Assembly: GCF_001447785.1 (NCBI RefSeq)
Contig: NW_015170287.1
Span: 737,905-801,904, forward strand
Direction of reading: 5' to 3'
From: Gekko japonicus
Lineage: Eukaryota
Length of the DNA: 64,000 bases
Positions 3,488 through 38,241 of the stretch are shown here, piece by piece. The notes under the pieces are model-generated. The model made no database searches and had not been told where the DNA came from. It saw only the letters and a list, made by a program, of their open reading frames with translations. Position numbers and translations under genes: made by a program. Numbering within the stretch: position 1 is the first letter of the stretch; the number at the start of each line of letters is the position of its first letter.

Positions 3488-4465
3488 CACAGCAAAAAGT
3501 ATTCAATGCATGAAAGGGAAACCACAGCCATCTTCATCATCAGTTTATTCAGCTAATATGACCAGAGCTCTTAGGCATAGTTAAAATCAGCAATTCAAAT
3601 ATACAGTCACCAAATTGTAATTCCAAAAATTGTAATACTAAGAAGTAGATAAAAGATACTAAAACTTTACAAAATTGATAAATAGCAAAACCTTACTAGT
3701 TATAATTTACTGTTAAGAAATAATCCAGATGAGGTCTCTCTTTCGTAACTAGTTTAGAACTGATTAGTAACATTTCAGTGAGATTATGATTGCCAAATAT
3801 TTCACTACTGAGACCATTATTTCAGGTACAGCATCCACCAGAAAATGAGAAATCACCCATAGTTCCAATGGCAGATGGTATTTAAATAGGATAGGGCATA
3901 TTTAATATGTCTTAAAAGCTGTCCATTGAGAGCAAAACAGTAGCAAGCGTGTCAAGGTCTCAAACACACGAAGCACACTAGCATAAAGTCTATCTGAATA
4001 ACTAAGGAATTTGCACAAATCGCCCCTTTAGTTCTGCTGATGGAAAAGCATTTTATTTTGTGAGAGTAAAAACAACCCTGTGAGTAGTAGTCATAAGGTA
4101 GCTTAGATATAAAGGAAGATTCAGTGGAGAGAGAATCCCAAAAGCAAGAGGAGAACAAACATGCCTAGCCTGAGTAGCTGTATCTCTATCCATATTGGAT
4201 GCCTTCAGTTTACTCAGTCTCCAGGCCTCTTGAGTTAATCTCATTTTAGGGAAACCACAGGTAACAATGGAGAGAAAACGAGTTACCCTCTGCCATCTCT
4301 TTTGCAAAGGTGATTTCACTCACCATCACATTAGCAATCAGACTATTACAAAAAACCACCTTGCTGTGGAAGCAGACATTGCTTCTCTACAAATGATAGA
4401 AATTATTCACAGTTGGCCCTTCTCTCTCCCTCCATCTGCTTTCCAACATTAAATAAGACTACTAC

Positions 4466-4880
4466 GGCCCCTGCCACATGGCAGGGAAACCACGAGGCAA
4501 AAGCTCGGCTAATAGAGCCGCTCCAACGTTGAGACGCTGCGGCGGGATCCCACGGATCCCCTGGCTGCAGCGCCTCTTCTCCCCGGCAAGAGCAGACGCC
4601 GGGGAGGACGAGCCCGATGGGAGGGGGAGGCTGCCGAACTGCGCATGCCCGAGCATGTGCAGTACGGCCGGGGGCTGGGATGCGGCAGCGCAAGGATGCG
4701 CCGCCGATCCCACGGCCGGCTTGGGGTGCTCCAGACGGCTGCAACCACCTAGATAGGTTGTTCGTTTTTGCAGCGGGGTATCACCATTTGGGGTATGAAC
4801 GGGGCCAAAGCTTGGGTAACATTTGCTGTGATTCCTTGCCACTGTTTTGTAGAAAACACACTAACCATGGTTTCACTCTC
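4466..4880. mobile_element. GC-rich non-autonomous DNA-transposon-like insert
   Basis: CpG-rich block in AT-rich intron starting GGCCCCTGCCACATGGCA; right terminus not clearly identified. Confidence 0.4.
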
Positions 4881-5625
4881 CACCGGAGACTTGGTTGAAT
4901 TAGCCATACTCCTCATAGGCATTCACGTAGCATGAAGCAATGATTAATGCCATGGGAGGATGGGAGGATACTGTATGATACCATACTGTATTGGCTCCAT
5001 TTGTGAACCATAGTGGGTAGGGAATGAGTATTACATTTGCTCAAGTTTATTCTTCCTCTGTTTGCCTGGTGTTCTGAGTTCTAAACACTATAATTTTTAG
5101 AGCATTATTTTCTAGCACAAGATGTACATTTGCAGATCCAATTCATCATGTAAGTTTGAGAAAGAAAAAAACCTGCCTGCTGAATGCTCTTTATCTACAC
5201 AATCCATACATATGTATAACATTAGTCCCCTTATGTGAATGCATGTAAACTACAATAGGGAGAACAGTCCTCAGGCCAAGAATGTGTACAGATGGCTAAG
5301 AGTCCTCATGTAAGCATCAGATGGAATAGATTAAGATGTCACAAACATTTTGCAAGCTTCCAGAGGAAAAAGCAGTTCAGGACACAAACATCCCTTAAAG
5401 GTCTAATTTCTTAGCAGATTTGCTGTACAAGGAAGCAACTGGGAATACAGGCTGGGATCTTAATGTTGGCTGTTACAAGGCATGAAAATAAACCTCACTG
5501 GGTATTTATAGAAAGTACTGATGTGAACACTGTATTTATTCAATCCATCCTTTTCTTAACCCAAAATTTCCCAGAACACTAAGTTCATCCACAATTTATT
5601 TATTTATATATTTATATATTTACAT

Positions 5626-5650
5626 ACACACACACACACACACACACACA
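5626..5650. repeat. (CA)n microsatellite
   Basis: Direct reading. Confidence 0.95.
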
Positions 5651-5941
5651 TTACATATCTGGACCATTTGGTGTGCACTAGTTCTATAAATTCACATTAT
5701 CATTTGCCCTTTTATAGCTGGCTCATGATCCGTTTGAATTCTCATTGAGTACTTAGCTCTGCTGCTAAACTGATATCCACAGTATCACCCATTCATAGAA
5801 GATCCCCTTTTTAATAGCAACAATAAACAGAAGGTGTTTGATTTTTAAACAGTATGGATTATATTTAATTAAACTGGGGAAGTTATAATCACTGAAAAAA
5901 TAATTATTTCAAGGAAAAGGCTATTTGAGGTTTGATATCTA

Positions 5942-6432
5942 GGCCCCGGTCACATGGGCCGGAAAATGCAGGGGGGGGGAGTGTGGCTGTTTGCCCCGGA
6001 GCAAAATAATGTGCGGCCGCCCGATCACACGTCCCGTCGAGGTCCTGTGGTTAGGGCATCAAGTGCCGATCACACGGCTATCCTGCAGCATGGCAAAGAA
6101 GTGGCGCGGCACGATCACACCAGCAATCGCCAGGCACTGCTTCCATGGCAAACGGGAATGTTTTTTCCTCACCAAAATGTGAGCATGCGCATGATCGTTT
6201 GTGCGCATCCTGTGAAGACTTTAAAAAAAACTAACTGGTTTGCGATGGGACTAGGACGGGACGCGATCAGACGCCCACCCTTGCCCCGCATTTTCCGGAA
6301 ACTAGTACATCGTAAGTACTAGTTTTTTACTCCGTATCTTCGGCACGAAGCCACAGGTTAGCCACAAGTGCACTACACTTCTCAGATGTTGTGGTGTGAT
6401 CGCGCCCGGAAAATCCGCCTATCATCCGTATC
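5942..6432. mobile_element. Harbinger-type MITE (same family as 37752-38241, opposite orientation), one end lost
   Basis: TIR GGCCCCGGTCACATGG; internal sequence is the reverse complement of the 37752 copy. Confidence 0.8.
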
Positions 6433-7967
6433 TTTATGACTGTGATGTGTTTTAATATTTTTAATGTTTTTATTGTTCCATTGTATGATTTGGCGATATG
6501 CCGTGTAAGCCGCCCTGAGCCTCCGGGGAGGGCGGGATAAAAATGTAAATATTAAATAAATAAATAGCTGTTCTGCTGCAGACCAGCATGACTACCCTCT
6601 GAAACCATGTGAAATATTGCACCATTCAAGTTACATTACATTTCAGCTTTCACTCTCACTAATTATTGTATGGAACCTATACATGGTTGGAACCTATAAA
6701 TCAATATCTCTTTTACTACATTACAGCGACGAACTCTCGATGATGCACAATCTCACCACTGCCCAGAATGCATAGCATACATATGCATCTAAATATCTCA
6801 GTCTACTGGTTTCAAAGCACCAGTGTGCCAAATTCTGAAAGAGATGCTATAGCACTGGGGAGACAGCAAGGGTCAGTTTCAAAAACACCCAGAGGTAAAG
6901 CCCTACAGCTTGTACGAAGTATCTGTAAAGCAACAGGGAAAACACACTGGCCTCAGTGATACCTAGGTCCTTTGTGCCCTGTGTCAATTAACATTCTGAC
7001 TCTCATTCACACATTCCTTCCTCCAGAATTAGGTGTGTTTTTTTTTATTCACCTCCTTTGCCTCTACCTGTCAACACATGGAAACTGATATGAAAGTCAC
7101 TGCAGCCTCTCTGACCGTGTTTAAAGCATTTATTGTGGATCAATAATCCCCTATACTGCTACTGGCACAGAAGATTCCTTGAGAAATTGCCTTTCATTAG
7201 AAATAGGCACTTGAAGAGCTCAGTGAATGAGTCAAAAATGGAACTGACAAATGTGACTCAAACAAAAACTGGAAGCAGTTCTCACAGCATTAAATGCCAT
7301 TGTTTGCATGAGTAGGGATGCGTTCTTCTTATGTTAGGCCAAGTCTGGCACTGTTTCGCTATGACTACGACCTGGAAATGACTGGCACACCTGGTAACAA
7401 TGCAAGGACTGGAGCCAATAGCATTGCTGTGATGGTATTTTAGGACCAAAGGCATTTCTCATCTCTGTGCTGCTCTGATACCATTGAAGCCATACAACAC
7501 TGAAAGAGATGCTTAGGATGAAATATCACCACAGCAGAAGAATGAGCTCAGGGGAGTTTCACCCTTATATACACTGGGAGAGAATTACATTTGGGGATAT
7601 GCACAGCTACACCTTTTCATTCATAACACTGTTTTTTTGTAATGAACTCAAGATTGACAGATCAATAATATCCTACTGTGTTCATGCCCTCAGAGCAGCT
7701 GTTATGTTCCATATTAGGTCTCAGCCAATTCCTAGCAGAGCTATTTAAAGAAAAAAGACCTAGATATTTGGAGGAAGATACCGGGGAAGAGTAATTCAAA
7801 AGGGAAGAAGATAAGGATTGGTAAACCCCACAAAAGGATAAAAATACCATAGTTATACCACCAAATTGGAAGTGCTATGGGGCCATTCTGTGAGCAAGCA
7901 TTAAATAATGCAATAGGGGAGGAGGCAGGAATTTATTTTCTTCTCTTTCATACAGGAAATTATTATT

Positions 7968-8203
7968 TTGGTGTAGTGGTTTGGTGTAGCATGGTTAAGA
8001 GTGCGGACTCTAATTTGGGAGAACCGGGTTTGATTCCCCATCCCTCCACATGTAGCTGCTGGTGTAACCTTGGGGCAGTCATAAGTTTTTTCAGAGCTGT
8101 TCTATCAAGGGCAGTTCTAGAGAGAGCGCACTCAGCCCCACCTACTCACAAGGTGTCTGTTGTGAGGAGGGGAAGGGAAAGGGGATTGTAAGCCACTCTG
8201 AGA
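7968..8203 (+). mobile_element. Squam3-like SINE running into assembly gap
   Basis: TTTGGTGTAGTGG...GGAGAACCGGGTTTGATTCCCCA head and CTGTTGTGAGGAGGGGAAGGGAAAGG body. Confidence 0.85.
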
Positions 8204-8526
8204 NNNNNNNNNNNNNNNNNNNNNNNNNNNNNNNNNNNNNNNNNNNNNNNNNNNNNNNNNNNNNNNNNNNNNNNNNNNNNNNNNNNNNNNNNNNNNNNNN
8301 NNNNNNNNNNNNNNNNNNNNNNNNNNNNNNNNNNNNNNNNNNNNNNNNNNNNNNNNNNNNNNNNNNNNNNNNNNNNNNNNNNNNNNNNNNNNNNNNNNNN
8401 NNNNNNNNNNNNNNNNNNNNNNNNNNNNNNNNNNNNNNNNNNNNNNNNNNNNNNNNNNNNNNNNNNNNNNNNNNNNNNNNNNNNNNNNNNNNNNNNNNNN
8501 NNNNNNNNNNNNNNNNNNNNNNNNNN
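8204..8526. other. Assembly gap; others at 22151-22348, 26974-27055, 31908-32070, 60069-60216, 63647-63775
   Basis: N runs. Confidence 1.
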
Positions 8527-8670
8527 AAACTGCTCTTTTTCAAGGACAGCTGTGCCAGAGCTTGTGACTGACCCAAGGTCACATCAGCAGGCGCAAGTGG
8601 AGGAGTGGGGAATCAAACCCGGTTCTCCCAGATTAGAGTCTGCACACTTAACCACTGCACCAAACTGGCT
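8527..8670 (-). mobile_element. Squam3-like SINE (5' part)
   Basis: Reverse complement of the SINE head, ending ACCAAACTGGCT. Confidence 0.85.
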
Positions 8671-11600
8671 CTGAAGGTAAGTTGCAGCAGACATTTTGTG
8701 GCTGGCTCCACCTCTTGTGGCAGCCATTTTATGGCAGCACCCACTATGCTGTGTTAGAATTCCAAAGGTGCCCAAAGGTTCAGAAAGGTTGGGGAGTGAC
8801 CCCTGTCCTAGTCCATGTCCAACATGCTAACTACCGTGAGCCAATCAGATTTTAAATGTCACCTACCTCCCAACACTCCTCCATGATGTAATCACAGCAG
8901 CAACAATCTAAAATGGCAAGCTGGAAGAGGAAAAAGCCCCTCTGGAGTTACCCCCCCCCCAGTGCTCCCTCAGGAGAAATGCCAGGCTAAAGAAGAATCA
9001 CAGTTCTGTAATTCTCCATCCTCATCTATCAGCCCAGTGGAGCAGGTCTTCTTCCACTTCCACTGGATAGATGTTGGCTGCCTTACCGCATTAAAACAAT
9101 TCAGGAGGTCATTTTTTACAAAGGTAATAGAGCTATATTATAATGAAATTGTTCAGTAAGATTCTTTAATAAAGGGAAAGGGTCTGTGGATTATACTACT
9201 GTGTACAGCATGTACCTGTTGCTGAATGTATTATCCCACTATGTAATATCTATGCATTGTTTAACATGTCATGTTACGGGATTTCTGATTTCTGCAGTCC
9301 TAACCCAATTGAATTGCTTATCAAAGCCTCCATCCTGCTAACTGCATTGCTTTACACTCTGCAATCTGCCTTGAGTACCAGTGAGAAAGGTGGGCTATAA
9401 AAATGTACATGAAATAAAATCAATGAACAGCACAGGGGGGTGATTCAATCGGTGGGGGGGGGATTATACAGCCTTCAATGGGCAGAATAAAAACTCATAA
9501 TCACAGTGGATATTCAATACAAATAAGGGGAGGGGAGGAAAGCCTTCACACACTGCAGACTAGAGGCTTCTCCATTATGCCCTGAAATATTCTCTCTCCC
9601 GATACAACATTGAGCTAGATGGATCAATGGTCTGATTCAGTATAAGGCAACTTCATATCTTCATGTCCAACCTGACAAAGAGTTCTGGAGGAACTCAAAG
9701 GCTCTCTTGTCATATTTTGATAAGTCCCTGTGAAAAGGCATTGCACTCCTGTTGTATTTTTCAACACAGATCTGTTCATTTTATTATTATTAGATCTTAG
9801 TCGATTCAAAGTTCTTCACAGCCTTCATTTTGTTTTTCTTCACAGGAGAGGAATATGTTTTTCACATGGTATAAATGATAAGCGGTATCTGAGTCAGAGT
9901 ATGTGCACAGATTTCACCTCAGACCTCACTGAGTTAAATCCAGTTCTCTATTTCACTACATTCAGTACCTGTCAATATATAAGATCGAAGGTTCATTACA
10001 GGATTTTAAGAGGCCTGTTAAACTCTGGAATAATGCATGTGCCATGACTGCACTGAGACAAGGCAATGTGCTATGTTCGCACAGGCCATATATTTTGCTT
10101 CCTCTATAACTAAAACATTTAGTGAAGGATGGAGAAGGGAAATAGAGTGGCCTTATTTATTGATCAATTTCTGCAGGCGCAGCCTTTCTCAGTTATCTTG
10201 ATGGATAATTTCCAGGGCCTGATTTCCACTTCCATGGAACAAAGCTGAAATATAGGGCAACCATAATATCTGTTTGCAGTTGGGGCTTAAAAAAAAGAAA
10301 GAAAGAAAGAAATGTGTTTAAGCAAGCTTGTTGTCGATTTAGCACTCAGTTAAAAAGAAGAACCGTTGACAGCATTATAAAGTCTACAATTCATAATATT
10401 TTCAGGATCCTGATAGTCAAAACAGTCACACGTAGGGTGAATTGTTGTGATCAGACATAGATGTGTATAGCCGGCAGACTCTTCCTATTCAGGAAAGACT
10501 GTAAGTGGCACAACAAATTAACTGGGCAAAGATACCACAAGTATCTGCTGAAGGGAGTGCTGAATCTTGAAAATGTATACCATGGGAATCTTATTTGTTT
10601 TAAGGTGCTACTGGGCTCTTGAATCTTGTTCTTCTATACACACCAACACAGCTACCCACCTGAAACTGCATGCCAAGAAACCTGACACTGCAGATGTAAT
10701 GGTATATCTAAGTTAGGAATCTATGTCTTTAGAAAGCGCAACCCAGTCTAGCACAAATCTCCCCCCACCCCTGGTTGGCAGTATTCTTCTCCAAGAGCAC
10801 CTCAGTGCTGTCTGAACTGAGTTTTAGTTTATTTGTCTCAACTGAATAGAGGAAGATAAATCCCCATGTCCTTGGGGGAGGGAAGTGCTGTTTTGGATGA
10901 GTGCAGACCTCACCTGTCCCAAAAACAAAGGTCTCAGCACTTTAAAATTTGAAATGTTTTTATTACACTTGACCAAATTCAGTTCAAGTTACCATGAAAT
11001 CACCCTGTTTCTAATGCAGCACTGCTGTAGTCATCAAAAATGTTATGATTTCTGGCATATCCTGATGCACTCCTGTGTAGTCACAGATAAATAAAACATC
11101 TAAACTAGTTCTTGGATCATAAAAGAGAGAAAGAGAGAGAGTGAAAAATCTGCTGTCTCTGTAGAATTCTGTACCAAAATTAATAGAAAAAAGTTTTGAG
11201 CATGCCAGTATCCACTTTATAGCTAGCCTTTAAAGAAGGACTCATAAAAAGCAGGAGTGCAATTGGGCAGTTCTGTCATATTGGCAACAAATCACAGGTT
11301 CATATAGCCGGTGCCATTGTTTCACTTTCAAGTGCTTTGTTTTTTATTCTTGTCTCAGCTTGAATCTGTAATGTACCTTTGCAGAACTTTGTGTACAGAA
11401 TGCGCCACGAGCACGGGGATTTCTCCATCTGCCACAACCTTTCTAACCCAAATGTACATTGGATAATTGTGTTTTCTAGAAAACGATAATCGAGTGGGGA
11501 CAATTTGCATAACTGATGGGCACATGCATATGGAACACCATCAAACATTGTATATAACTCACTACACAATACACAGTTTGAGTCCATCTTTAAAACTGAC

Positions 11601-11842
11601 AAAAGTTTTATTCAAGGTCTTAAAGGGGCCACTGGACTCAAACTTTGTCCCGCTGCTTCAACACCTGAATCTACACAATACGCACTACACAATACAAGGT
11701 TTATCTCAAATTGGGATGACTTCTTCTCCCCCTTAGGGATGCAACAATGACAGGAAATCCTAAGTAAAGTTACACTATTCTAAGAAAAATGAATTCAATG
11801 GGCATAGAATAGTCATATTGTTAAGGCCTAAACTTGCATAAT

Positions 11843-12545
11843 AAGGTTTCCCTTGCTCAAAAGCTAGTCGAATCCGACTCTAGGGGGTGGTGCTCATTTC
11901 CATTTGCAAGCCGAAGAGCCAGTGCTGTCCAAAGACGTTTCCGTGCTCATGTGGCCAGCATGACTAAATGCCGAGGTGCACACTGTTACCTTCCCACCAA
12001 AGCGGTACCCAGGGCTATTTTTGGGCAGGAACGGACAGTAACGGAGAGTTCCGGCTGGCTCCTGATTTGGCCACGCCCAGCAGGAACTCATTAGCATAAT
12101 AGGCCACACCCAACAGCAGAAATTTATTAGGATTGGCTACATTAGGGGTGTGTGGCCTAACATGCAAAGGAGTTCTTGCCACAAAAAAAGCCCAGGGTTT
12201 TGAACACAAACAAGGGAAACAGTATAAAAAGCAAAAGGTGGGTGTGGCTGGATGACCACACTTCTGGTAACATGGGGGTGTGGCCTAATATGCTAATGAG
12301 ATGTGCTATCAGGGGTGTGGCCTAATATGCTAATATGCTTCTGCTGTTGGGTATGGCCTATTATGCTAATGAGTTCCTGCTGGGCTTTTTCTACACCCCC
12401 CCCCCCTGGCAGTACCTATTTACCTACTTGCAATTTCTTGCTTTCAAACTGCTAGGTTGGCAGGAGCTGAGGCCAGAGACGGGAGCTCACTCCATCATGC
12501 GGCACTAGGGTATCAAACTGCCGAACTACAGACCTTCCGGTCTGC
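11843..12545 (-). mobile_element. Sauria SINE interrupted by a hAT MITE
   Basis: GGTGGTGCTCATTTCC...GTGGCCAGCATGACT...GTTACCTTCCC...TACCTATTTACCTACTTGCA...GCTAGGTTGGCAGGAGCT. Confidence 0.85.
12010..12408. mobile_element. hAT MITE (CAGGGCT termini) nested in Sauria SINE
   Basis: 8-bp TSD gcggtacc/gcagtacc; subterminal GGTGTGGCCTAATATGCTAATGAG repeats. Confidence 0.9.
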
Positions 12546-13129
12546 ATACCCAGATATAAAACCTATTGAGTTCAGTAGGTCTCATTCCCAAGCAAATGTG
12601 TTTGAGATTGCAGCCTCAATTATAACACAATTGTAACACAAAGTAGTTCTGAATGGACTTAAAAGGGTGTAACTATTTAGGACTGCACAGTTGTTCAGTT
12701 CAGTTTTAACTGGACAACAGCTTTTGTTGCTAAAAAAAAGTTTGATTTTAATTTTTAATGTCAGTAATTAGTCACCAATTGATGGCGGAATCTTTCTTAC
12801 AAGTGCATGTGGCCTGAGAGGCTATTTGGTGGTTGTTGTTCTTTTTTCCCTAAAATGGGGGTTAAAAGCAGCTCTGATGTGTGTGCAATGGTAGCTTAAA
12901 ATTGTACCTATAACATGCATAGGTTAGGTTCAACCCCCTCCCCCCAAAAAATGCCCCAGATCCAGAAGATGGTTTTGTTTACTGCACTCATGGTTTATAG
13001 TAACAGACCTAATCTTAAAAAAATTAGCTCCACCTCTCATAAATGAAACCAGCGAAACATATGAGTTGCAGTTATTTTAATCCATTAATGTGGATTGTCA
13101 GGTCCCAGCATTATTATTTAAAACATTTT

Positions 13130-14235
13130 TTTATTCATTTAAAACATTTGTTAGCCATTTTTCTCCCTTGTGGGACTCAAGGCAGTTTACAATATAAATA
13201 AAACATTATAAAAAGACACAATAAAAACAACAATGATAAAACCCATAAAAGTCACAGGTTAAGAACTCCAATTAGGACTGCCAAACAGACCTAAATAAAA
13301 TTATCTTCAGCTGCCTCTTGAAGAATGACACCGAGGAGGCCAGGCACACCTTCCTGAGGAGGTTGTTCCATAGTTGGGACTTGAAAAGTCAGGCTCACAG
13401 CTTGGGAGTGCTGCTTGATACAGCAGCCACCTTAGAAAATCAGGTGCCTGCTGTGCTTCAAAGTGCTTTCACCCACCTTCAGTTCGTTTGCCAGCTATGC
13501 CTGTTCTTGACTCAATCTGATATAGCCACAGTGATAGTTACATCTAAAGAGTCAGTTTGGTGTAGTGGTTAAGTGCGTGGACTCTAACCTGGGAGAACCG
13601 TGTTAGATTCCCCACTCCTCCACCTGCAGCTGCTGGAAGACCTTGGGCAAGCCATAGTTCTGTCAGAGCTGTTCTCTGAAGGGCAGTCCTTAAAAGAGCT
13701 CTCTCAGCCCTGGCTACCTCACAGGGTGTCTGATGTGGGGAGGGGAAGGGAAAGGTGTTTGTAAGCCACTTTGAGACTCCGAGTGAAGGGCAGGGTATAA
13801 ATCCAATCTCCTCCTCTTCCTCTTCTTCTTGGTTGGACTATTGCAATATGCTCTGCTTGGGGCTTGAAGAGTGTTTGGCGGTTGCAGCCTGCTACTAAAA
13901 CCATGTGACCCCAGTCCTACAGCAATTATTCTGGCTTCCAATCTCCTCCTAAACCCAATTAAAGGTGTTGATTCTTACCTTTAGCGCTACATGGCTTGGG
14001 ACCAGGGTATCTAAAGGACCTTTTTCTCCCATATGTGCTTGGCGGGGAAACTAAGATCACAGGAAGAGGCCCTCTTGCCTGTCACATCAACCAAAGAAGC
14101 TCATCTGGTGGGTACATGAGAGAGGACTTTTTCATTTATTAGCCAGTGGAAGCCCCACAATTATGGAGCTACCTCCCCAGGTGTGCTTGGTCCCCTCACT
14201 CGTGATCTTTAGGAGGCAACTGAAGACAGTTTTAT
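13130..14235. mobile_element. L2-type LINE fragments interrupted by a Squam3-like SINE
   Basis: Degenerate L2 3' motifs (e.g. GGACTATTGCAATATGCTCT, GGCTTGGGACCAGGGTATCT, TTTAGGAGGCAACTGAAGAC). Confidence 0.65.
13548..13830 (+). mobile_element. Full-length Squam3-like SINE with (CTT)n tail
   Basis: GAGTCAGTTTGGTGTAGTGGTTAAG head through ATAAATCCAATCTCCTCCTCTTC tail. Confidence 0.9.
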
Positions 14236-14294
14236 TCATGACGGCATTTGATTAGTTCTTCTCCATACCAGCAATTTTAAATGGTTGATTTTAA

Positions 14295-14537
14295 GAAGAA
14301 GAGCTGTTTTTTACACTCCATTTTTCACTACCCGAAGGAGGCACAGAGCATCTAACAATCACCTTCCCTTCCTCTCCCCACAACAGACACCCTGTGAGGT
14401 AGGTGGGACTGAGAGAGCTCTGAGAGAACTGTGACTGCCCCAAGGTCTCCCAGCTGCCTTCATGTGGAGGAGTGGGGAATCAAACCTGGTTCTCCAGATT
14501 AGAGTCTGCTGCTCTTAACCACTACAAACTGGCTCTG
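14295..14537 (-). mobile_element. Squam3-like SINE
   Basis: Reverse complement of the same SINE. Confidence 0.85.
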
Positions 14538-15255
14538 GAACTTCCAGTTCTTATGTATTTTATGCATTCAATGCTATTTATTATTATTTTCACTGTAAGC
14601 TGCCTTGAGTTCTTATAAGTTAGAAAGGTGGTTAATGAATGATTAATAAAATAAATAAATAATTCTATAAATTGCTGTGGAGATAAAGTGTGTGTCTTGC
14701 CATTATTTTCTTTTCTAAATTTAATAAAACAAAAAAGTGGACACTCATTGTGAGTGATGCATAAATTATAAAAGAAATTGCTTTATTTTAAAATGCAAGG
14801 TAGAAAAGTCTAAAGAACAAATAATAAAATGCAGATTTTAAAATGCCTTTGGATTAACCTTAAATTTACATCTAAACCTATTTCTACCTTGAGGCCATAT
14901 GTGTCACCTATGGAACATATCAAGCAAAACTAGCTTAGTTAGCAAGTGATACAAGATCATCCCAGAAGCAATGCCCATGATATATTCCAGACTCTGTCAT
15001 TGGAGAGAAACAGCCATGGAAATCAATTGAATGGAAGACCTGCTGAAAGCAAAGCTTATTGGCCAAAATGAACTGGTTGCTTCTGCAAAGTCTGGCTGTC
15101 TATAGATTCACCTTGCCCCTTTCAGCGAGTACAAAAACTTATGGATTCTACCTAATTACTCTACAACAGGAACCCTGAAGAATTCCACAGAGAATCCCAC
15201 ATCTGATCCCCGAGATCAACCTGTATAGGAATGTGTCAGGTGTGATTGGCATTTT

Positions 15256-15737
15256 CAGGGGTCATTTCCTGCGGGAGCGCACAGGAGCGGAGCTCCGGCA
15301 GTAGGGAGCCCAGGGGGAGGGCACATGCAATAAGCCCCACCCCCTGCTACCAGCAGCCCTCAGTTGGACCATGAGGAGCAAGAAGCAGCCAGGTAAATTG
15401 TACCCCCCCGGACCACCTTCAGGTACAAGCTCTCCCTCCTCTGTGAGGACAGATCTGCACATTCCCCCCCCCCAGCTAGCAATCCAAAACAGTCCAGTGG
15501 CACCTTTAAGCAAGTTTTATTCCGGTCCAAGCTCTCCCTCCTTTGTGAGGACAGATCTGCATGTTCCCCCACCCCCAATAGCTAGCAATCCAAAACAGTT
15601 CAGTGGAGCCTGAGCAGTGGGTGTTGCCTCCTGACACACTTCCAATGAGGTCAGGGGGTATGGCATATGCAAATAAGGTATGCTAATAAATTATGCTAAT
15701 AAGCTCCTGCACCTCTTTTTCTACGAAATGACCCCTG
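15256..15737. mobile_element. hAT MITE, TIR CAGGGGTCATTT, with internal ~90-bp tandem units
   Basis: Perfect 8-bp TSD ggcatttt. Confidence 0.92.
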
Positions 15738-16361
15738 GGCATTTTTAGCATTTTTACGCTTTTCCCATTTGTTGACACAGTGACTTATCAACCATTTTCT
15801 TCACCATTTCTCTTTCTTTTAAAAACTTCTATCCACATTTTGTGCATTGCCATTACGTAAAAGTTAATAATCATTACAACATTTTAAATCCACTTGAAGA
15901 TTTGGATTCCCTGTTGAAAAAATGTTCAAAACAAGTGAACAAAAATCAAGAACAACTGTTGTTATTTCCATTCCACTGTGCTGCAATGCAGGAATGAGAA
16001 GTATTTGGTTTCAAATCACGATCAATGAGAAATTCAAAAGCATCCATGGAAAAGACAGAAGGTGAAAGCTGAGTGGAGAAACGGATAAAAAGATGATGCC
16101 TTCCTGTCTATCCAGGGCTGCCTGATGCATACGCATGATGTAACCAGAGGCCTTGAAGTGACAACTCTTATCATCCATTCAAAAATGGTTTTACATTTCA
16201 TGGGAAAACCTTCAGGTATAATTTGACCTCGTTGAACCTATGTGCAGTTAATTATTCAGTGAATTAAACAATTAAATTTACAGTGGACATATACAAGGCA
16301 TACCTAAGTCATATTATAGCTGTCAGCCCTTCTGGTTGCGGTTATTCAATAAAGGTCTTTA

Positions 16362-16538
<177 letters not shown>

Positions 16539-16809
16539 TTATAACACAATATTTTATACATAACTTTTATTAAGATACTCATGGCTATTAGAATTACTGC
16601 ATATGTCCAAAAATGGAAAAGGACTTCTGATATATTAAAGACTGATTTCTGCAGAGTCAAAGCACTGGGATGTGCCAGTGATCATCAACATTTCTTAGCC
16701 CAGACCCATCCTTTGGGCAAAGAAAGGGCACCACCACTCTGCCTCTCTACTTTGTATTGCTTCCTGTGAGCATTAAGGAGAATACAGCCCTCTGATTCCA
16801 AGTCTTAAG

Positions 16810-16994
16810 CAGTGTTCCCTCTGAGCTGAGTTAGTGTGAGCTGGCTCACAGTTTTTTAGCCTCCAGCTCACACATTTTGTCTTAGCTCAGGGAGGATGGC
16901 TCCAGAGCAAACTAATTTATGCAGCAGCCAAATTGCTCGCTCACAACTTTAATGCCAGTAGCTCACAAGACTCCACAGCTTAGAGGGAGCATTG
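16810..16994. mobile_element. ~200-bp hAT MITE (TIR CARTGYTCCCTCT)
   Basis: Perfect 8-bp TSD gtcttaag. Confidence 0.92.
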
Positions 16995-17921
16995 GTCTTA
17001 AGTATGTACATTAAAATTATATATGGCATGGTAAGCTGTTAGTGCCTCAGACTTCACATACCATATATGGCTTTTTGGCCTTGAATCTTTAAGTCTCGTG
17101 TGAACCCTGTCTACCTTTCTGAAAAAGGAATAAACAAGGACAGGTAGATTTACATTTCACAAACTAACTGAGGTAAAGCTATTCTTGATTTCTGCAGGCT
17201 ATTTTAACTGTCATTAGGGAATGGTAAATCCTTGTTTCATTTTTTAATGTTCACACATTAAATAATGCATGTAACAAACACCTTGAGCCAAACCAATTTA
17301 TCGTAAGAATAATCACAAGTATATGATTTAGATCAGCAGAACTACTATCACACTTTATTAACACAATAAAACATGGTGTACATTTAAACCATACTTAGGT
17401 CTTGCCACTTGTAAATGAAAGATCAAATGTTCCCTTTTAGGATTTGCTTTTTTCATAAATATATCTGACAGCTGCTACTATTTGTATAGGATTTTAGATA
17501 TTAGATGGATTGATATAATATATTCAGAAGGTGCATCCCACAGTCACTTTCTTATCTGCCATCTGTTATTATGTAGAAACGTCAGGATTTTAATAAGGAA
17601 AAATACATCTTATAAATCCAGAGACTACATCCCAAAACACAATAATGAAATTTATATTAGAGTAACTAGATGCACAATTTATGCATAAGCCTTTACATAA
17701 AATATTCAAACATTGATATCCTTGCATTATTACATTCAAAATAAATGTGTCGTTTTATCCATTAAAAAAAAATCAGGGGTTAGATGAGAGTTCACCACAG
17801 GAAAGTATACAGGAAGTCTGTTTCCTTATCTCTTTGCTTAATGGTTGTGATGAGATAGAGACGAATGCAAATTTAATAGCTACACATTCATCAGGAAGGA
17901 TTAACTTGGGTGACTTTAGAG

Positions 17922-19194
17922 CAGGGATTTTTAACCTGGGGTCCACAGACACCCAAGGGGTCTGTGAATAGATTTCAGCAGATCCATGAACTTGGATGGG
18001 GGAAAACAAATTACATCTTTATTTTCACTAACTGCTAAGTGATATTTAGCATGCCCTTCAATTATAAATGCAGGTAACAAGCCACAGCAATATTAGCAGT
18101 ACCTGTGACTTTGTCACCAATAGAAATCACAGATATTTTCATACCACATTACAGTTGTTGCAGATTATCTCAAAATATCATTTCTGCTCATCACTACTTG
18201 GAAATTATGGTAGTTATTAGACCTGTCGCTAGATTGCATGTGATGGCAGTCTTCCTGCCTACAGATGCTTGTGCAAAGTAGATGGCCAACTATTGGGGAA
18301 TTCTGCGCCTAGTAGTCATTCAGCCACCGAACAGTGAAGTCTCGAGTTCTCACACTGGTGACCCAGACATCGACACTGCTTTCCAGTATTCCCTATCTGC
18401 AATTGTTTATTGATCAATACATGGAAGGAAATGAGTCATTTTCATTGTTTGTTAAAGTTTTGCAAAGCTGGACAGTTCAAATAAGAATTGTTAACTCTGT
18501 GTAAGGCGATGAAGCCTTCTGTAACATGGACAGGCGTGTAGGCTATGAGTGTAAAAGTTCAAATAAGTTCAAACTGTCATTTTTAATGTGTTAACAAAGA
18601 AACACTCAGGGCTATTTTTGGGCAGGAACGCACAGGAACGGCATTCCGGCTGGCTCCCAAGTTGACCACGCCCAGCAGGAACTCATTAGCATAATAGGCC
18701 ACACCCAACAGCAGAAACTCATTAGGGTTGGCTACATTAGGGGTGTGTGGCCTAACATGCAAAGGAGTTCCTGCTACAAAAAGGCCCTGGGTTTTGACAA
18801 CAAACAAGGTAAACAGAATAAGAAGCAAACGATGGGTGTGGCTGGATGACCACACTTCTGGTAATGAGGGTGTCTGTGGCCCAATATGCTAATGAGCTGT
18901 GCTGTCAGGGGGTGTGGCCTAATATGCTAATTGGTTTTGCTGTTTGGTGTGGCCTATTATGCTAATGAGTTCCTGCTGGGCTTTTTCTACAAAAAAAGGC
19001 CTGGAAACACTTATATTACTATATCACAATTAAAAAAAAAAATTTTATAACTGTAATTCAGTATAATTGGTTTTCTTCATAATTGTATGCATTTTATGTT
19101 ATGCATTTACAAACATTGTTCTGAGAAGTGGTCCATAGACTTCACCAAACTGCTAAAAGAATCCATGGCACAAAAAATTGGTTAAGAACCCCTG
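17922..19194. mobile_element. hAT-Charlie (Charlie4-like) non-autonomous transposon with nested MITE
   Basis: TIR CAGGGATTTTTAACC/GGTTAAGAACCCCTG; perfect 8-bp TSD ctttagag. Confidence 0.88.
18607..19003. mobile_element. hAT MITE (same family as 12010-12408) nested in the Charlie-like element
   Basis: Perfect 8-bp TSD gaaacact. Confidence 0.92.
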
Positions 19195-20855
19195 CTTTAG
19201 AGGGGGAAAAGTTCTATAAGTTTATCTGGTTGAATAAATATTATGAAATAAAACATGCATTCAATTAATAAAAAAAGAAAAGAAACGAGACTGTAGTGAC
19301 CATCAGCGGGGACGAATGGAATCATTATCAAAGATTTGTTATCTAATTCATTTTATTACAATGAATGTTATAAAAAGTGCAGGAGGGTAATGAAAAATAA
19401 TTCACACTCATGAACTGACAATTGATAAGTTTTTGAGATACTGGATGTAATCAAGGCAGGGTGTTAGGTGAAAGAAATGTGATTGATATCAGTGTTACTT
19501 CCAAACAGATTTATCTGGGATTGAGAGACGAGATGAGAGCTCAAAAGACCTTGTTGTGCTCTAATTATCCAGAAGCTCCTTTGCAACCTGCACTCGACTC
19601 CTCCAAACATAATTTCTCCATATTTCTAAGCTATGCTGATAATTACTGAGGTATAAAGACAGTTATTGGAGATCTTGTTTGGCAGCCTTATTATTAGTTA
19701 CAAGAATAAATGACTGATAATAAAATGAAAATGAAATTGGACTGCATTAAAAAAAAGGAATTCTAAAAAAGCCTACAAAAGCTAAACCATTTCTTTAAGA
19801 AATACCGTCACATTCTTATGCCACACTTTCAGGGAGCTTAGGGTAGTGTTCACTGTTTTCTGTCCCACATTTTATCTTCAAAACAAACATGGGACGTTGG
19901 TTGGGGGGGGGAGACTGACCAGTAAACTTCAAAGCAGAAGAAAAAATTGAACCTGGGTCCCCAGAAGTACTCACTCTAACTACTGGCCCACAGTGACTGT
20001 AATTCTCTACCATTTGTCATTTTCATATACTCACACAAACCCCAGCTGTTTAAAGTCTTTGAAATCTAATGGCATCATGTACTTTTTGATAGTTTTTTTT
20101 AAATAAATGGAAACAAGATAACTTAAATGATGTCATATATTTTCATAGAGTCTACATCATGGACTAGTTTCCATATAATCAGATGCATGAAATGTATCTA
20201 CTGTTGGCCAATATGGTCAACAGCCAATGGAATGCAAGAAGTACAGTCTGTGACATGTTTATACAAAGCTCAGATGCATACAAGGTAAGAACAGTGACTA
20301 TTCACAACATCGTGATTAGTTAATAACACAGACTTGCTAGCCTTGCTAATCTAACACCTGTAGTGTGAGAAAAACACAGAATTGTCACCTTTTTGTGGTT
20401 TCAGTCTTTTTATTTCTATGCAACAACTTTACTTTTTTATTTTTTTTATCAAAATATTTTCCAGGAAACCCTACCATCTTTATCAATGTACATTAGAAAG
20501 GTATCTAAATATTTTTTTAAAAAAATAATTAAATGTTGTCCCTTATTTTGTCACACCAGAACATAATAAAGATTATACAATTTTCAACAAAATTATCTGT
20601 GCAAAACCGGTATTTCTTGGAGTTCTCTGATAGTACATTAATCCCAGTTGGGACTTTATGCAGCTATCAGCTCATTTAAAAATACTGGAAAGATCAGATC
20701 TTGGCTCTCTCAGTGCCATCTGTTTTGATGCTTATTTTGATGGAATGGGGAAATTCACTAAGAACACTAATTGTGCAATATGTTTATAGGTGTGAAAAGA
20801 CAGAGGTGAAACTTGGCTCATTATAAAAGGACAAGATGCCATCTTAATGAAAAGG

Positions 20856-21729
20856 TGTTATGGCATGTGTGATGGACTGCACTTTTAAAGCTTAGAAATT
20901 CTGTATAAACAGGTAAAGGACTGTGAAGTGTTAATTATTCACAGAGCCAGAGAGCCTTGAGTGACAGGCTGGTCCAAGGGATCTCATTGGTTAGCATTAG
21001 CTGAGCAGAGAAAGACTTCTGAATTGGATGCTGAGGAGAATTCAGTCTGATTCCAGCTCTAGCTGAGGAGAGTCAAGTACTGACAGTCTCAGTATTCAGC
21101 CCTAACTGAGAGCAGTTTAACACAGACAGGAGAACTGGGGAAAGTTGGCAAGGATGAGTGGGTAGTTAGATGGTGACCCACATTCTGGCCAAAGAAAGGG
21201 GACAGATCTTCTAGTGAGAGAAGAATTTCCCTACCCAGTCAAACATGGAGGTAGCTCTGAAAAATACAGAGATCCCTGGTCTGGTGTGGTTAGAAACTGC
21301 CTTTGGAGACCTTTGGAGTCAGTTAAAACATCAAGACCAATATTGGCATTTCAAGAGAAGGGGTTTGGGTACTGGATAGAGTGTACCAGCCTTCTGGAAA
21401 CTGAAAGAGTAAGAGAATACTCATATAAAGTGTACTGGAGTGTTTGGGAAAACACTGGGGAAAAGCCTCTTAACATAAAGATTTTAAGTAACTCTTAATA
21501 GCTTTAAAAACTCTCATTAAACTGAATCATAAGAACTAAAATCTGTGCATGCACTGATTTTACCTCAGGAATTCCAACCTCTGATTTCACCTGACCTTTC
21601 TCCTCTATGTTGAAAAAATGTTTCATTAATTTGGAATATAAAAACATCTTGAGTGCCATTAAAGGGGGTTCCCAATCCTTCCCACGGTTTCCTGGGCTGA
21701 GCAAACAGCCAAAATATTATACTGTGACA
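20856..21729. mobile_element. Possible solo LTR
   Basis: Begins TGT and ends TGTGACA with LTR-like composition; no convincing TSD. Confidence 0.35.
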
Positions 21730-27237: not shown

Positions 27238-27606
27238 CTTATATTTATAATTGTACTGTTCTGATTTCATTTTATTTTTGTTTTAATTGTTTTATATCTC
27301 TATGTAAGCTGCCCTGAGCCTGCCTTGACGGGGAGGGTGGGTTATAAATTAAATAAATAAATAAATAAATTTGGGGAGACAGAGGAAGGGAAGATGTTCT
27401 GAGGCGATACACTATCGTAGAGCACAATCTCAGTTCCCCATCTGGCAAATAGGAACTAGGCAGGTAATTGTGAAAATCCATGAGATAAAACAATGTTGTT
27501 ACAGAATCTTAAAAACACAACACTGTATCCATCCAAATAATTAATAAAGAAATGGACTGGGTTAGAAAGAAAGTTCAGTGGGAAGCCAAAATGGCTAGAT
27601 ATTAGC

Positions 27607-27692
27607 AGTGCCATCCTAACCAGAGTTACACCTTTCTAAATCCATTAAAGTCAATGCGCTCAGAAGGGTGTAACTCTGGTTAGGATGGCACT
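27607..27692. repeat. Short palindromic MITE
   Basis: AGTGCCATCCTAACCAGAGTTACACC...GGTGTAACTCTGGTTAGGATGGCACT hairpin; relatives at about 40662-40748 and 62905-62985. Confidence 0.85.
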
Positions 27693-27696
27693 ATAA

Positions 27697-28308
27697 GGGT
27701 CTGGTCACACGGACGTTTATTGTGGGATTCGCTGCTGATCCCTCGCGCTTTTAAAGTTTCTGTTTACACACGCCAATCCGCCTCCCACACCAAAGCAGGC
27801 TCACTCGCGCAAGACTCACGGGTTTTCCTGACCCCGGGAAAATCAAGTACTTTCCTGGGTCTCGCGCTTTGAAAGCGCGATTTCACCTATATGAACATCC
27901 CTCTTTCGCAATGATTTCGCAATTATTGCGAATAGGGCCGTCTGAACACTCTCTGATATATATATTTTTAAAAGCTTCCAGTTTGAGCGCATGGGCAGGC
28001 ATTCGCTTAAGAACTCAGCTCGTGCCGCGCACCTTCCTGCTGGGCCTCGACCTCCTGGCCGCCCAGAAGCACCGGGAGAAGGCACCCCAGGCTGGTGGCG
28101 ACTGGGCCGATGGCAAGGACAGCCCTGCGGCCGCCCAGGAGCAGCTGCTGCCGTCGCCGGATGGGGACGAGGGCGAGGGGGAGAGCTAGCAGCTGGTAAG
28201 AGGGATGGCTCTTGAGGGGTGGTGTAGACATGTAAAATCGGAACAAAATATTCCCGTTTAAATTACAGCGGGAACAAGGCACATTTACAGCGCCGTGTGA
28301 CCAGACCC
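27697..28308. mobile_element. Non-autonomous PIF/Harbinger-type transposon carrying a captured gene fragment
   Basis: Perfect 16-bp TIR GGGTCTGGTCACACGG/CCGTGTGACCAGACCC; TAA on both sides (27694-27696, 28309-28311). Confidence 0.92.
28022..28195 (+). pseudogene. DHX38: Captured fragment resembling DHX38/PRP16 N-terminal coding exon
   Basis: [20 protein letters not shown]...DWADGKD versus recalled human DHX38 [21 protein letters not shown]...DWEESKD; in-frame TAG at 28187-28189; followed by CTG|GTAAGA. Confidence 0.78.
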
Positions 28309-28349
28309 TAAGATTCTACCCACCCTGCAACTGAGGAATGGGATATGAT

Positions 28350-28536
28350 CAATGCTCCCTCTAAGCTGTGGCATCTTGTGAGCTACTGGCATTAAAGCTG
28401 TGAGTGAGCAATTTGGCTACTGTATAAGTTAGTTTCCTCTGGAGCCATCCTCCCTGAGCTAAGACAAAAATGTGTGAGTTGGAGACTAAAAAAACTGTGA
28501 GCTAGCTCACACTAACTCAGCTTAGAGGGAACACTG
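28350..28536. mobile_element. ~200-bp hAT MITE
   Basis: Perfect 8-bp TSD gatatgat. Confidence 0.92.
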
Positions 28537-37751: not shown

Positions 37752-38241
37752 AGCTCCGGTCACACGGAGGATTTGCTGCGCTAAAGGCACGAATGTCATG
37801 TGGATTTTTGGTGCGCAATCACACCTCAACATCTGAGAAGCGTAGCACACCCGTGGCGTCCCGCCGAAGATGCACAGTAAAAAAGTACCTCAGAAAGTGC
37901 ACTAGTATTTGGAAAACGCAGGGCAGGGGTGGGCATCTGATCGTGGGAAAGCTAGTATCCCGTGGCATCCGGCACCCATCCACATCCCATCACAAACCAG
38001 ATGTTTTTCGTAAGTGCATGTGCACAAACACGTAACTGAAAGCAGTGCTGCTCTGCGGAACTGTGCATGCGGAACTGTGCCGCTTTTTTGCCACACTCCA
38101 ACATCGCCGTGTGATCGCCAGCTAACAGCCTAAGTGCAAAGACTCAGGAGACCGTGTGATCGGGCTACCATGCTTTATTTTGCTCCGGGGCTAACAGCCA
38201 TGCCTCCCCACCGTAACTATCTGGCCCGTGTGACCGGGGCC
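37752..38241. mobile_element. Harbinger-type MITE
   Basis: TIR AGCTCCGGTCACACGG/CCGTGTGACCGGGGCC; 3-bp TSD TGA. Confidence 0.88.

What the first reader, a model, noticed from the sequence alone, without database searches (positions are those of the whole stretch)
27694..28311. Pack-type Harbinger transposon carrying a DHX38/PRP16 gene fragment, antisense inside CSMD3
Seen: a 612-bp element with perfect 16-bp TIRs (GGGTCTGGTCACACGG) and TAA on both flanks. Its GC-rich core (about 28020-28200) reads [35 protein letters not shown]...GEGES*QL and is followed by a canonical-looking donor CTG|GTAAGA. Established: a 3-bp TWA TSD with short TIRs is the PIF/Harbinger signature. From memory, the DHX38 N-terminus has [18 protein letters not shown]...DWxxxKD. 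Inference: the element captured genomic DNA (exon end plus the start of an intron) from the splicing-helicase gene. S>F (tcc>ttc), R>H (cgc>cac) and a TAG fit neutral decay. Intact TIRs and TSD suggest the cargo moved with the element, so a multicopy gene-capturing family is possible; such Pack elements are well known in plants and much rarer in vertebrates. CSMD3 is transcribed from the opposite strand, so its pre-mRNA would contain DHX38-antisense RNA.
Basis: partly seen in the sequence, partly recalled or inferred. Interest (0 to 1): 0.88.

Follow-up and report, generated by a model that had tools for sequence, protein, structure and literature searches.

The report
Gecko jumping gene carrying DHX38 fragment
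A 612-bp non-autonomous DNA transposon in a gene intron carries a decayed piece of the splicing-helicase gene DHX38, and that piece has been copied along with the transposon dozens to hundreds of times in gecko genomes, which is rare in vertebrates but a known kind of event and probably has no function here.

Summary
Element 27697-28308 has perfect 16-nt terminal inverted repeats (TIRs), or 17 nt counting the flanking A/T, with TAA on both flanks and a GC-rich core.

- **DHX38 origin: confirmed.** The core matches seven Gekko kuhli hypothetical proteins at E 1.7e-14 to 6.6e-6 in 1.84 billion proteins. One of them matches human PRP16/DHX38 residues 32-167 at E 1.8e-33.
- **Multicopy: confirmed.** Summed depth over the whole element, core included, is about 100 times that of the unique flank in DNA runs of two organisms. 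At least 45 and 79 distinct contig variants cover the core. Nine G. kuhli gene models lie on contigs of seven different lengths.
- **This copy** is an internally deleted (about 150 nt), frameshifted, stop-bearing member.
- **"Exon end plus intron start": not supported.** Orthologous DHX38 exons end elsewhere. GTAAGA most likely lies inside decayed coding sequence (R-K-R). Longer copies span two DHX38 exons; whether they keep the intron is unresolved.
- **PIF/Harbinger membership** fits the TAA duplication and short TIRs. The partner transposase was not tested.
- **Host gene:** a CUB-domain exon on the minus strand puts the cargo antisense to the host gene. CSMD3 identity was not tested, and no RNA from this locus was seen.

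Verdict: a new member of a known kind (animal Pack-TIR), notable for its copy number.

The parts
27694..27696 (.). Left target-site duplication, TAA
   Evidence: Identical to 28309-28311. A 96%-alike contig from another copy (X7 record 17) aligns from 27694 onward and has a different flank before it.
27697..27712 (+). Left terminal inverted repeat, GGGTCTGGTCACACGG
   Evidence: It is a perfect inverted repeat with 28293-28308.
27713..27970 (+). Left arm (transposon backbone). Holds short direct and inverted subterminal repeats at 27742-27756/27861-27875 and at 27904-27932. CpG-rich (observed/expected 1.22).
   Evidence: Summed depth in X1 is 2-5 times that of the cargo, suggesting relatives that share the arm without the cargo. 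Its 3' limit is uncertain, because some G. kuhli copies carry DHX38 sequence further 5'.
27971..28211 (+). DHX38/PRP16-derived cargo, sense on the + strand. The first ~15 codons are frameshifted (..SSLSAWAGIRLR.. where longer copies read ..SSLAAEQHVFK..). The in-frame part is 28019-28186. A deletion of about 150 nt lies at about 28183/28184. The stop TAG is at 28187-28189. The coding remnant continues in another frame to about 28211.
   Evidence: phmmer E 1.7e-14 to 6.6e-6 against G. kuhli models. tblastn maps P0001 to 27971-28177 and P0005 to 27977-28258 with a 47-codon gap. BLASTP against real squamate-like DHX38 exon A gives E 2e-10.
28196..28201 (+). GTAAGA, a donor-like hexamer that is most likely not a DHX38 splice donor
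   Evidence: Frame 3 reads ..AAGKRDGS across it. This matches the P0002 and P0011 tails and the real ..KERKRDHG. Real exon B ends about 10-17 codons further on, at ..RKRDR.
28212..28292 (+). Right arm. Holds TTACAGCG twice, next to the TIR.
   Evidence: The P0005 tail (..LEGWWRH...NIPV) aligns to 28196-28258, so a G. kuhli copy has the same downstream sequence. Depth roughly doubles from about 28248.
28293..28308 (-). Right terminal inverted repeat
28309..28311 (.). Right target-site duplication, TAA
   Evidence: X7 contigs 19 and 20 stop exactly at 28311.
16362..16538 (-). Context: open stretch holding a CUB-domain exon of the host gene, on the minus strand
   Evidence: Pfam CUB, E 7.2e-08, 33.2 bits against a cut-off of 21.4. 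Motif scan. This sets the host gene's orientation. It was not resolved to CSMD3.

Best explanation
This is one decayed, internally deleted copy of a multicopy non-autonomous TIR DNA transposon family of geckos. Its ends look like PIF/Harbinger. Its internal region derives from the N-terminal coding part of the splicing helicase gene DHX38/PRP16.

Most simply, the gene piece was acquired once. In longer copies it covers roughly codons 28-167, which span two exons. It was then carried along as the element was mobilised in trans, reaching dozens to hundreds of copies.

A shorter derivative lacking about 150 nt of the cargo is the form seen here, and that form is itself multicopy. This copy inserted at a TAA inside an older repeat, in an intron of a CUB-domain gene, with the cargo antisense to that gene. 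It has a frameshift and a stop codon, encodes nothing, and is most likely a neutral passenger.

Shown: the ends, the duplication, the DHX38 origin, the multicopy state, the deletion and the decay.

Inferred: Harbinger membership, single acquisition, mobilisation in trans, and lack of function.
For: - **Ends and duplication:**
- **DHX38 origin:** the only PDB hits of the core are human PRP16 residues 43-84, weakly (E 0.27). phmmer of the 60-aa core against 1.84 billion representatives gives 7 hits at E 1.7e-14 to 6.6e-6, all Gekko kuhli hypothetical proteins. P0006 against PDB matches PRP16 residues 32-167 at E 1.8e-33. The core against a real squamate-like exon-A ORF (P0009) gives E 2e-10. P0007 against P0055 gives 74% identity over 47 aa.
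- **Same element in G. kuhli:** P0005 aligns from 27977 through the cargo into 28196-28258. P0001 shares this copy's frameshifted start.
- **Multicopy state:** X1 summed depth is 10,292-21,678 over the cargo bins, against 111-136 on the unique flank. In X16, from a second organism, it is 3,932-17,372 against 18-22. Between 38 and 45 (X1) and 34 and 79 (X16) distinct contigs show variants at cargo positions. X7 contigs are 96% alike and end at 27694 and 28311.
- **Deleted form is itself multicopy:** many contigs cross 28187 with few or no gaps (records 4, 10-15, 19).
- **G. kuhli models:** nine, on contigs of seven different lengths from 69 to 178 Mb.
- **Decay:** stop and frameshift. No Pfam domain.
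Against: - The cognate autonomous Harbinger sharing these TIRs was not found or tested.
- The tool states that summed contig depth is not a copy number.
- Single acquisition rests on protein-level comparison of annotated models only.
- The element is much richer in CpG (observed/expected 0.63-1.22) than its flanks (0.11-0.28). This fits a young insertion, but could also mean the element escapes methylation for some reason.
- The species of the window is coded and was not identified.
Confidence: 0.8

Rival explanations
1. One reading: the element captured genomic DNA consisting of the end of a DHX38 exon plus the start of the following intron, with CTG|GTAAGA as the original splice donor.
For: - GTAAGA is a good donor consensus.
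- Depth over 28196-28247 is like that of the cargo rather than the more abundant outer right arm, so this stretch travels with the cargo.
- Real exon B is followed by GTAA.. in read-through ORFs (..RDR then GK/GN). After an extra internal deletion, the site could therefore be the exon-B donor.
Against: - DHX38 coding similarity in this copy stops 10-17 codons before the orthologous exon-B end, while P0006 continues to ..RDYDHK.
- In another frame the hexamer is part of ..AAGKRDGS, collinear with real ..KERKRDHG and with the P0002 and P0011 tails. Judging from their protein sequences, those two copies lack the GT.
- The upstream 'ttccag' is not an acceptor either, because real exon A is continuous from M1.
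Confidence: 0.2
2. The cargo was taken from spliced DHX38 RNA or cDNA, or from a retrocopy, rather than from the gene itself. Longer copies would then join exon A to exon B without the intron.
For: - Five G. kuhli models (P0002, P0003, P0004, P0006, P0011) read straight across the KD|RHY exon junction.
- ORFs called on genomic contigs of real DHX38 genes run into an intron there: about 43 codons in P0009 and more than 100 in P0055.
Against: - The G. kuhli proteins are eukaryotic gene models, so the annotator may have spliced an intron out.
- P0005 has a 15-nt gap centred on that junction, as a shifted predicted intron would give. This was inferred from the protein sequence.
- The fragment is the 5' part of the mRNA with no 3' end or poly(A), which is unlike ordinary retroposition.
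- This copy lacks the junction, so the window cannot decide.
Confidence: 0.35
3. The element is not PIF/Harbinger. It belongs to another TIR superfamily, and the TAA flanks are coincidental or reflect a different target preference.
For: - Only one copy's flanks were read.
- A related-TIR element at 37752-38241 is flanked by TGA, not TWA.
- No transposase link is established.
Against: - A 3-bp duplication with short TIRs is the stated hallmark of PIF/Harbinger (PMC2213677 and PMC4482050, abstracts seen).
- TTAA is absent, so it is not piggyBac. No 8-bp duplication as expected of hAT (own knowledge) is seen, and a 2-bp TA reading fails on the right flank.
- The second element also has a 3-bp duplication.
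Confidence: 0.2
4. The copy, or the family, is functional. Its antisense DHX38-like RNA, made from host-gene introns, would feed small-RNA or antisense regulation of DHX38, or the cargo would be exonised.
For: - Copies are present in RNA-derived data (X7 contigs, low X21 read depth on the element).
- Antisense transcripts of parental genes have been noted for some animal Pack-TIRs (PMC8277862).
Against: - No reads fall on the unique flank of this locus in the RNA run (depth 0).
- The cargo is decayed, with a stop, a frameshift and a deletion.
- Copies differ by about 15%, with no sign of constraint.
- No small-RNA data were examined.
Confidence: 0.05

Closest known systems
Animal Pack-TIRs (Tan et al. 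2021, Nat Commun 12:4280, PMC8277862)
   Same: A TIR DNA transposon whose internal region is a duplicated host-gene fragment. The captured piece is short (their median is 224 bp). Their multicopy cases tend to carry GC-rich captures, as this one does.
   Different: Of their 370 cases, 87% are hAT or TcMariner, and the word Harbinger does not occur in the main text. Only four were multicopy (frog, alligator), and the one multicopy example described shows three transposition events. Here there are at least dozens of distinct variants per genome. Their pipeline discarded intronless captures of multi-exon genes, so a spliced cargo would have been filtered out.
Plant Pack-MULEs and Pack-type transposons
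   Same: Capture of gene fragments followed by amplification through several rounds of transposition (as summarised in PMC8277862). That these captures are often GC-rich 5' gene parts is from my own knowledge.
   Different: Those are Mutator-like elements with 9-11-bp duplications (own knowledge) in plants. This is an element with a 3-bp TAA duplication in a squamate.
Tourist-like MITEs of the PIF/Harbinger superfamily (e.g. mPing)
   Same: Short non-autonomous elements with TIRs and a 3-bp TWA duplication, mobilised in trans by a transposase together with a second protein (PMC2836001 and PMC2213677 abstracts).
   Different: Ordinary Tourist MITEs carry no recognisable host-gene sequence. The link of this family to an autonomous partner is untested.
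Helitron gene capture in bats and Xenopus (PMC4224331, PMC12001565)
   Same: Multicopy vertebrate DNA transposons that spread host gene fragments.
   Different: Those move by a rolling-circle mechanism without TIRs or target-site duplications. This element has both.

Membership tests
PIF/Harbinger non-autonomous element (Tourist-like MITE) | 3-bp target-site duplication, typically TWA | tested here: met
   TAA at 27694-27696 and at 28309-28311. Only this copy's flanks could be read. One 96%-alike contig of another copy also begins its match at the TAA.
PIF/Harbinger non-autonomous element (Tourist-like MITE) | Short terminal inverted repeats | tested here: met
   A 16-nt perfect repeat, 17 nt with the A/T pair.
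PIF/Harbinger non-autonomous element (Tourist-like MITE) | Cognate autonomous element with the same ends, encoding a PIF/Harbinger DDE transposase and a Myb-like protein | not tested
   None lies in the window. An earlier unverified note (s1-828040) reports a Harbinger transposase gene elsewhere in this genome, but its ends could not be compared.
PIF/Harbinger non-autonomous element (Tourist-like MITE) | Many copies at different loci, with no transposase coding capacity | tested here: met
   Depth and distinct-contig counts in two organisms. The element is 612 bp with no Pfam hit.
Pack-TIR (transduplicating TIR transposon) | Internal region derived from a host gene unrelated to transposition | tested here: met
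   DHX38/PRP16 N-terminal region.
Pack-TIR (transduplicating TIR transposon) | Cargo-bearing copies at several loci, each with its own TSD | tested here: inconclusive
   Many cargo-bearing variants, and nine G. kuhli models on contigs of seven different lengths.
Pack-TIR (transduplicating TIR transposon) | Identifiable parental locus not itself flanked by the transposon | not testable with these tools
   The DHX38 locus of this genome could not be fetched. Only orthologous exon ORFs from unnamed contigs were seen.
Pack-TIR (transduplicating TIR transposon) | DNA-level capture (introns of the parent retained) | tested here: inconclusive
   Annotated models cross the KD|RHY junction seamlessly. 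P0005 has a 15-nt gap there. This copy lacks the junction.
Functional DHX38/PRP16 gene or paralogue | Open reading frame with a DEAH helicase core | tested here: not met
   Only about 70 N-terminal codons remain, with a frameshift, a 150-nt deletion and a TAG stop. No Pfam domain was found.
piggyBac | TTAA target duplication | tested here: not met
   The flanks read ..ctaTAA|GGG and CCC|TAAgat, with no TTAA.

The most novel reading that the evidence does not exclude
The cargo may be a spliced, intron-less two-exon piece from the 5' part of DHX38 mRNA. In that case a cut-and-paste DNA transposon acquired sequence from an RNA or cDNA template, not by ordinary L1 retroposition since the piece has no 3' end or poly(A). 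It then spread that sequence to hundreds of loci in geckos. This would be the highest-copy Pack-TIR known in a vertebrate, possibly still recently active given the perfect ends and undecayed CpGs, and of a class that published screens filter out by design.
Probability: 0.15. Interest if true: 0.7.

Novelty: new member of a known kind. Interest (0 to 1): 0.5.

Why it matters
Gene-fragment capture by cut-and-paste transposons is well documented in plants. In animals the published survey found it to be mostly single-copy and generated without transposition, with only four low-copy multicopy cases in vertebrates (PMC8277862).

A Harbinger-like family carrying a piece of an essential splicing helicase to dozens or hundreds of loci in geckos would be a clear vertebrate case of capture followed by real amplification. 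It gives a tractable system for asking three things:
- how the capture happened, from genomic DNA or from spliced RNA;
- whether shorter deletion derivatives transpose better;
- whether many sense and antisense copies of a host-gene fragment have any effect on the parent gene.

For this particular locus the practical meaning is small. It is an intronic passenger, and such copies produce spurious 'hypothetical proteins' in annotations, as in G. kuhli.

Tried and rejected
- **Direct PDB search with the 56-aa core:** only a weak hit to human PRP16 (E 0.27). It became convincing only through the G. kuhli intermediates.
- **Pfam on the core:** nothing.
- **Copies inside the window:** none beyond the TIRs.
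- **The look-up of encoding contigs for P0005, P0006 and P0002:** Their TSDs and the intron question stay open.
- **The search for homologous proteins with the window's own 73-aa fragment:** a single candidate. The length filter also kept full-length gecko DHX38 out of reach.
- **A possible second, older DHX38-like stretch in the left arm** (27792-27869, weak tblastn hits at E 0.03-0.4): rejected, because 135 of 500 shuffles reach the DNA alignment score.
- **Rfam on the region:** only sub-threshold miRNA-precursor matches to the neighbouring hairpin repeat.
- **Paper search for the TIR string:** only unrelated primer sequences.
- **Paper searches for Harbinger, squamate or gecko gene capture:** no description of this family.
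- **Scan notes by sequence and by the words DHX38/PRP16:** blank.
- **piggyBac, hAT or a TA-duplication reading of the ends:** rejected from the flanks.
- **Empty-site evidence:** contigs joining about 27696 to about 28350 come from paralogous copies of the two flanking high-copy repeats. They are not the orthologous locus, so they were not used.

Full report
**1. The observation.**

The stretch 27694-28311 is as described.
- The repeat finder gives a 17-nt, 100% complementary inverted repeat at 27696-27712 / 28293-28309, with 580 nt between the arms. It is a 16-nt GGGTCTGGTCACACGG plus an A/T pair.
- TAA lies directly outside both ends.
- The TIR pattern with up to 3 mismatches is found 6 times in the window against 0.23 expected.
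- The core is GC-rich, 0.67-0.72 over 28000-28200.
- Frame 1 from 28019 reads [21 protein letters not shown]...GEGES, a TAG stop, then QLV, with CTG|GTAAGA after the stop.
- No other copy lies in the window.
- Three other elements or ends carry the same inner TIR motif ..GGTCA(C/G)ACGG: 37752-38241 with TGA on both flanks, 58757-58772 and 61827-61842.

**2. Is the core DHX38?**

Searched directly against the PDB, the 56-aa core hits only human PRP16/DHX38, residues 43-84, and weakly (E 0.27). Pfam finds nothing.

The decisive result came from phmmer against 1.84 billion cluster representatives. It gave seven hits at E 1.7e-14 to 6.6e-6. All are 'hypothetical protein' models of Gekko kuhli on chromosome-size contigs. 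Two further models came from later searches, P0011 and P0054. The nine models lie on contigs of seven different lengths, 69 to 178 Mb.

These models contain longer pieces of the same sequence.
- P0006 (147 aa) matches human PRP16 residues 32-167 at E 1.8e-33.
- ORFs called on unannotated genomic contigs gave real DHX38 N-termini. The window's fragment matches one of them, P0009, at E 2e-10.
- The G. kuhli model P0007 is 74% identical over 47 aa to another, P0055.

So the core is DHX38-derived.

**3. Is it one mobile family?**

tblastn of the G. kuhli models on the window shows that they are copies of the same element, not just of the same gene.
- P0005 aligns from 27977, through the cargo, into 28196-28258 (..VRGMTLEGWWRH..NIPV against ..VRGMALEGWCRH..NIPV). 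That stretch is downstream of the DHX38-like reading frame.
- P0001 shares this copy's frameshifted start (AAWMGLAWR against SAWAGIRLR).

Read laying on 27500-28500 at 80% likeness gives the copy-number picture.
- In DNA run X1 (organism A), the unique flank 27500-27567 has summed depth 111-136, with one exact contig at depth 64. The element has 10,000-100,000, including 10,292-21,678 over the cargo bins.
- In X16 (organism B), the flank has 18-22 and the cargo 3,932-17,372.
- The tool warns that summed depth is not a copy number. The count of distinct contigs is firmer: 38-45 in X1 and 34-79 in X16 show a given variant at cargo positions.
- Typical pieces are 84-87% alike to this copy.
- Contigs of run X7 (a run guessed to be RNA) are 96% alike. 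One starts its match exactly at 27694 with a different flank before it, and two end exactly at 28311.
- The arms have 2-5 times the depth of the cargo in X1, so relatives without this cargo probably exist.

The family prediction is therefore confirmed, in two coded organisms and in G. kuhli. The scan itself had not noted this family before.

**4. Anatomy of this copy.**

Relative to the longer G. kuhli copies, this copy lacks about 47-50 codons, from ..QATSG.. through ..KDRHY.. to ..VYAS. The junction is at about 28183/28184. Many contigs from both organisms cross that point with few or no gaps (records 4, 10-15, 19). The short form is therefore itself a multicopy subfamily, meaning it was amplified after the deletion.

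The first ~15 cargo codons are frameshifted, and TAG at 28187 closes the frame. The copy encodes nothing.

The element is much richer in CpG than its flanks. Observed/expected is 1.22 for the left arm, 0.63 for the cargo and 0.97 for the right arm, against 0.11-0.28 for the flanks. Together with the perfect TIRs and duplication, this suggests a fairly young insertion from an old family. That is an inference.

**5. The 'exon end plus intron' claim.**

ORFs called on genomic contigs of real DHX38 genes read through introns, and so reveal the exon structure.
- Exon A runs from M1 to ..S(S)RKD. Intron sequence follows (P0009, P0010, P0055, P0056).
- Exon B begins at RHYRS.. and ends at ..RKRDR, followed by GK.. 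or GN.., that is GTAA.. (P0009, P0012-P0030).

Against this structure:
- The upstream 'ttccag' is not an acceptor, because exon A is continuous there. P0007 carries DHX38 sequence further 5', from ..GGLLLKKRSS.
- The DHX38 reading frame of this copy stops at the ..SSKE.. region, 10-17 codons before the real end of exon B. P0006 continues to ..RDYDHK.
- Translated in frame 3, 28174 onward reads ..ELAAGKRDGS. This lines up with the tails of P0002 (..AASSERDGS) and P0011 (..AAADEKDGF), and with real ..ASSKEEKERKRDHG.

GTAAGA is thus most simply a decayed AGG-AAG-A (R-K-R) inside coding-derived sequence. I give this about two chances in three, because the region is purine-rich and of low complexity and I could not see the DNA of other copies.

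The longer copies span the exon A/exon B junction. Five annotated models cross it exactly. That means either a spliced source or introns removed by the annotator. P0005 has a 15-nt gap centred on the junction, which hints at a shifted predicted intron. I cannot decide between DNA-level and RNA-level capture, and this copy has lost the junction.

**6. Superfamily.**

A 3-bp TAA duplication with short TIRs is the PIF/Harbinger hallmark (PMC2213677 and PMC4482050 abstracts).
- piggyBac is excluded, because there is no TTAA.
- A TA reading fails on the right flank.
- No 8-bp duplication, as expected of hAT (own knowledge), is seen.

The defining link to an autonomous element with a Harbinger transposase and a Myb-like protein was not tested. 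An unverified note of this scan (s1-828040) reports a Harbinger transposase gene elsewhere in the genome.

**7. Host gene and expression.**

The window holds an open stretch with a CUB-domain exon on the minus strand at 16362-16538 (Pfam CUB, E 7.2e-08). The host gene therefore runs on the minus strand and the cargo is antisense to it. Whether the gene is CSMD3 was not tested.

In the RNA raw-read run X21 (about 3% of the run was read), the unique flank has depth 0 and the element only 1-25 reads of depth, all attributable to other copies. There is no evidence that this locus is transcribed in that sample. No small-RNA data were examined.

**8. Comparison with what is known.**

Tan et al. 2021 (PMC8277862) found 370 Pack-TIRs in 100 animal genomes.
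- 87% were hAT or TcMariner.
- Most were single-copy and attributed to transposition-independent gap filling.
- Only four multicopy cases were found (frog, alligator), plus one fly family. The one multicopy example described shows three transposition events.
- The word Harbinger does not occur in the main text.
- Intronless captures of multi-exon genes were filtered out.
- Their multicopy cases favoured GC-rich captures, as here.

This family is therefore a new member of a known kind. It is unusual for its Harbinger-like ends and its copy number. Other unverified notes of this scan report Pack-like hAT elements in the same genome (s1-828010, s1-824286), so the genome may be rich in such events.

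**9. Limits.**
- The length filter of the search for homologous proteins kept full-length gecko DHX38 out of reach.
- Run and organism names are coded, so the species of the window is not identified.

**10. Verdict.**
- Observation: confirmed.
- DHX38 cargo and multicopy Pack-type family: confirmed.
- Harbinger membership: likely but incomplete.
- Exon-end/intron reading: not supported.
- Function: none apparent.
- Interest: 0.5.

Noticed in passing
window 27607-27692: An 86-bp hairpin repeat (40-nt arms, 88% complementary, 6-nt loop) lies directly left of the insertion. Its summed depth in X1 is about 150,000-210,000, against about 64-136 for unique sequence. It has only sub-threshold Rfam matches to miRNA-precursor models (best 32 bits against a gathering score of 98). 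It looks like a palindromic MITE.
   Followed up: partly
window 28350-28536: A 187-bp MITE-like repeat with 19-nt inverted ends (CAATGCTCCCTCTAAGCTG..). Summed depth reaches about 1e7 in X1, and thousands of reads cover it in the RNA run. Contigs often join it to the hairpin repeat at 27607-27692, so the two may be parts of one very abundant composite repeat, into which the DHX38-carrying element inserted.
   Followed up: partly
window 37752-38241: A 490-bp element whose ends (AGCTCCGGTCACACGG / GGCCCCGGTCACACGG) share the inner 10 nt of the TIR with the element under study. It is flanked by TGA on both sides and has no internal similarity to that element.
   Followed up: partly
window 58757-58772 and 61827-61842 (possible partner end near 62373-62389): Further ends with the ..GGTCA(C/G)ACGG motif. 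This suggests a wider group of MITEs in this genome that use related ends.
   Followed up: no
window 16362-16538, minus strand: An open stretch holding a CUB-domain exon (..[12 protein letters not shown].., Pfam CUB E 7.2e-08). It is the only coding exon of the host gene that I located in the window.
   Followed up: partly
Gekko kuhli proteins P0001-P0007, P0011, P0054 (GenBank KAL81... and KAL82... accessions): Nine annotated 'hypothetical proteins' of G. kuhli are decayed copies of this transposon's DHX38 cargo. They are annotation artefacts of a repeat family.
   Followed up: yes
window 27697-28308 versus its flanks: CpG observed/expected is 0.63-1.22 inside the element but 0.11-0.28 in the flanks (41 CpGs in 612 bp). 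This points to either a young insertion or escape from germline methylation.
   Followed up: partly
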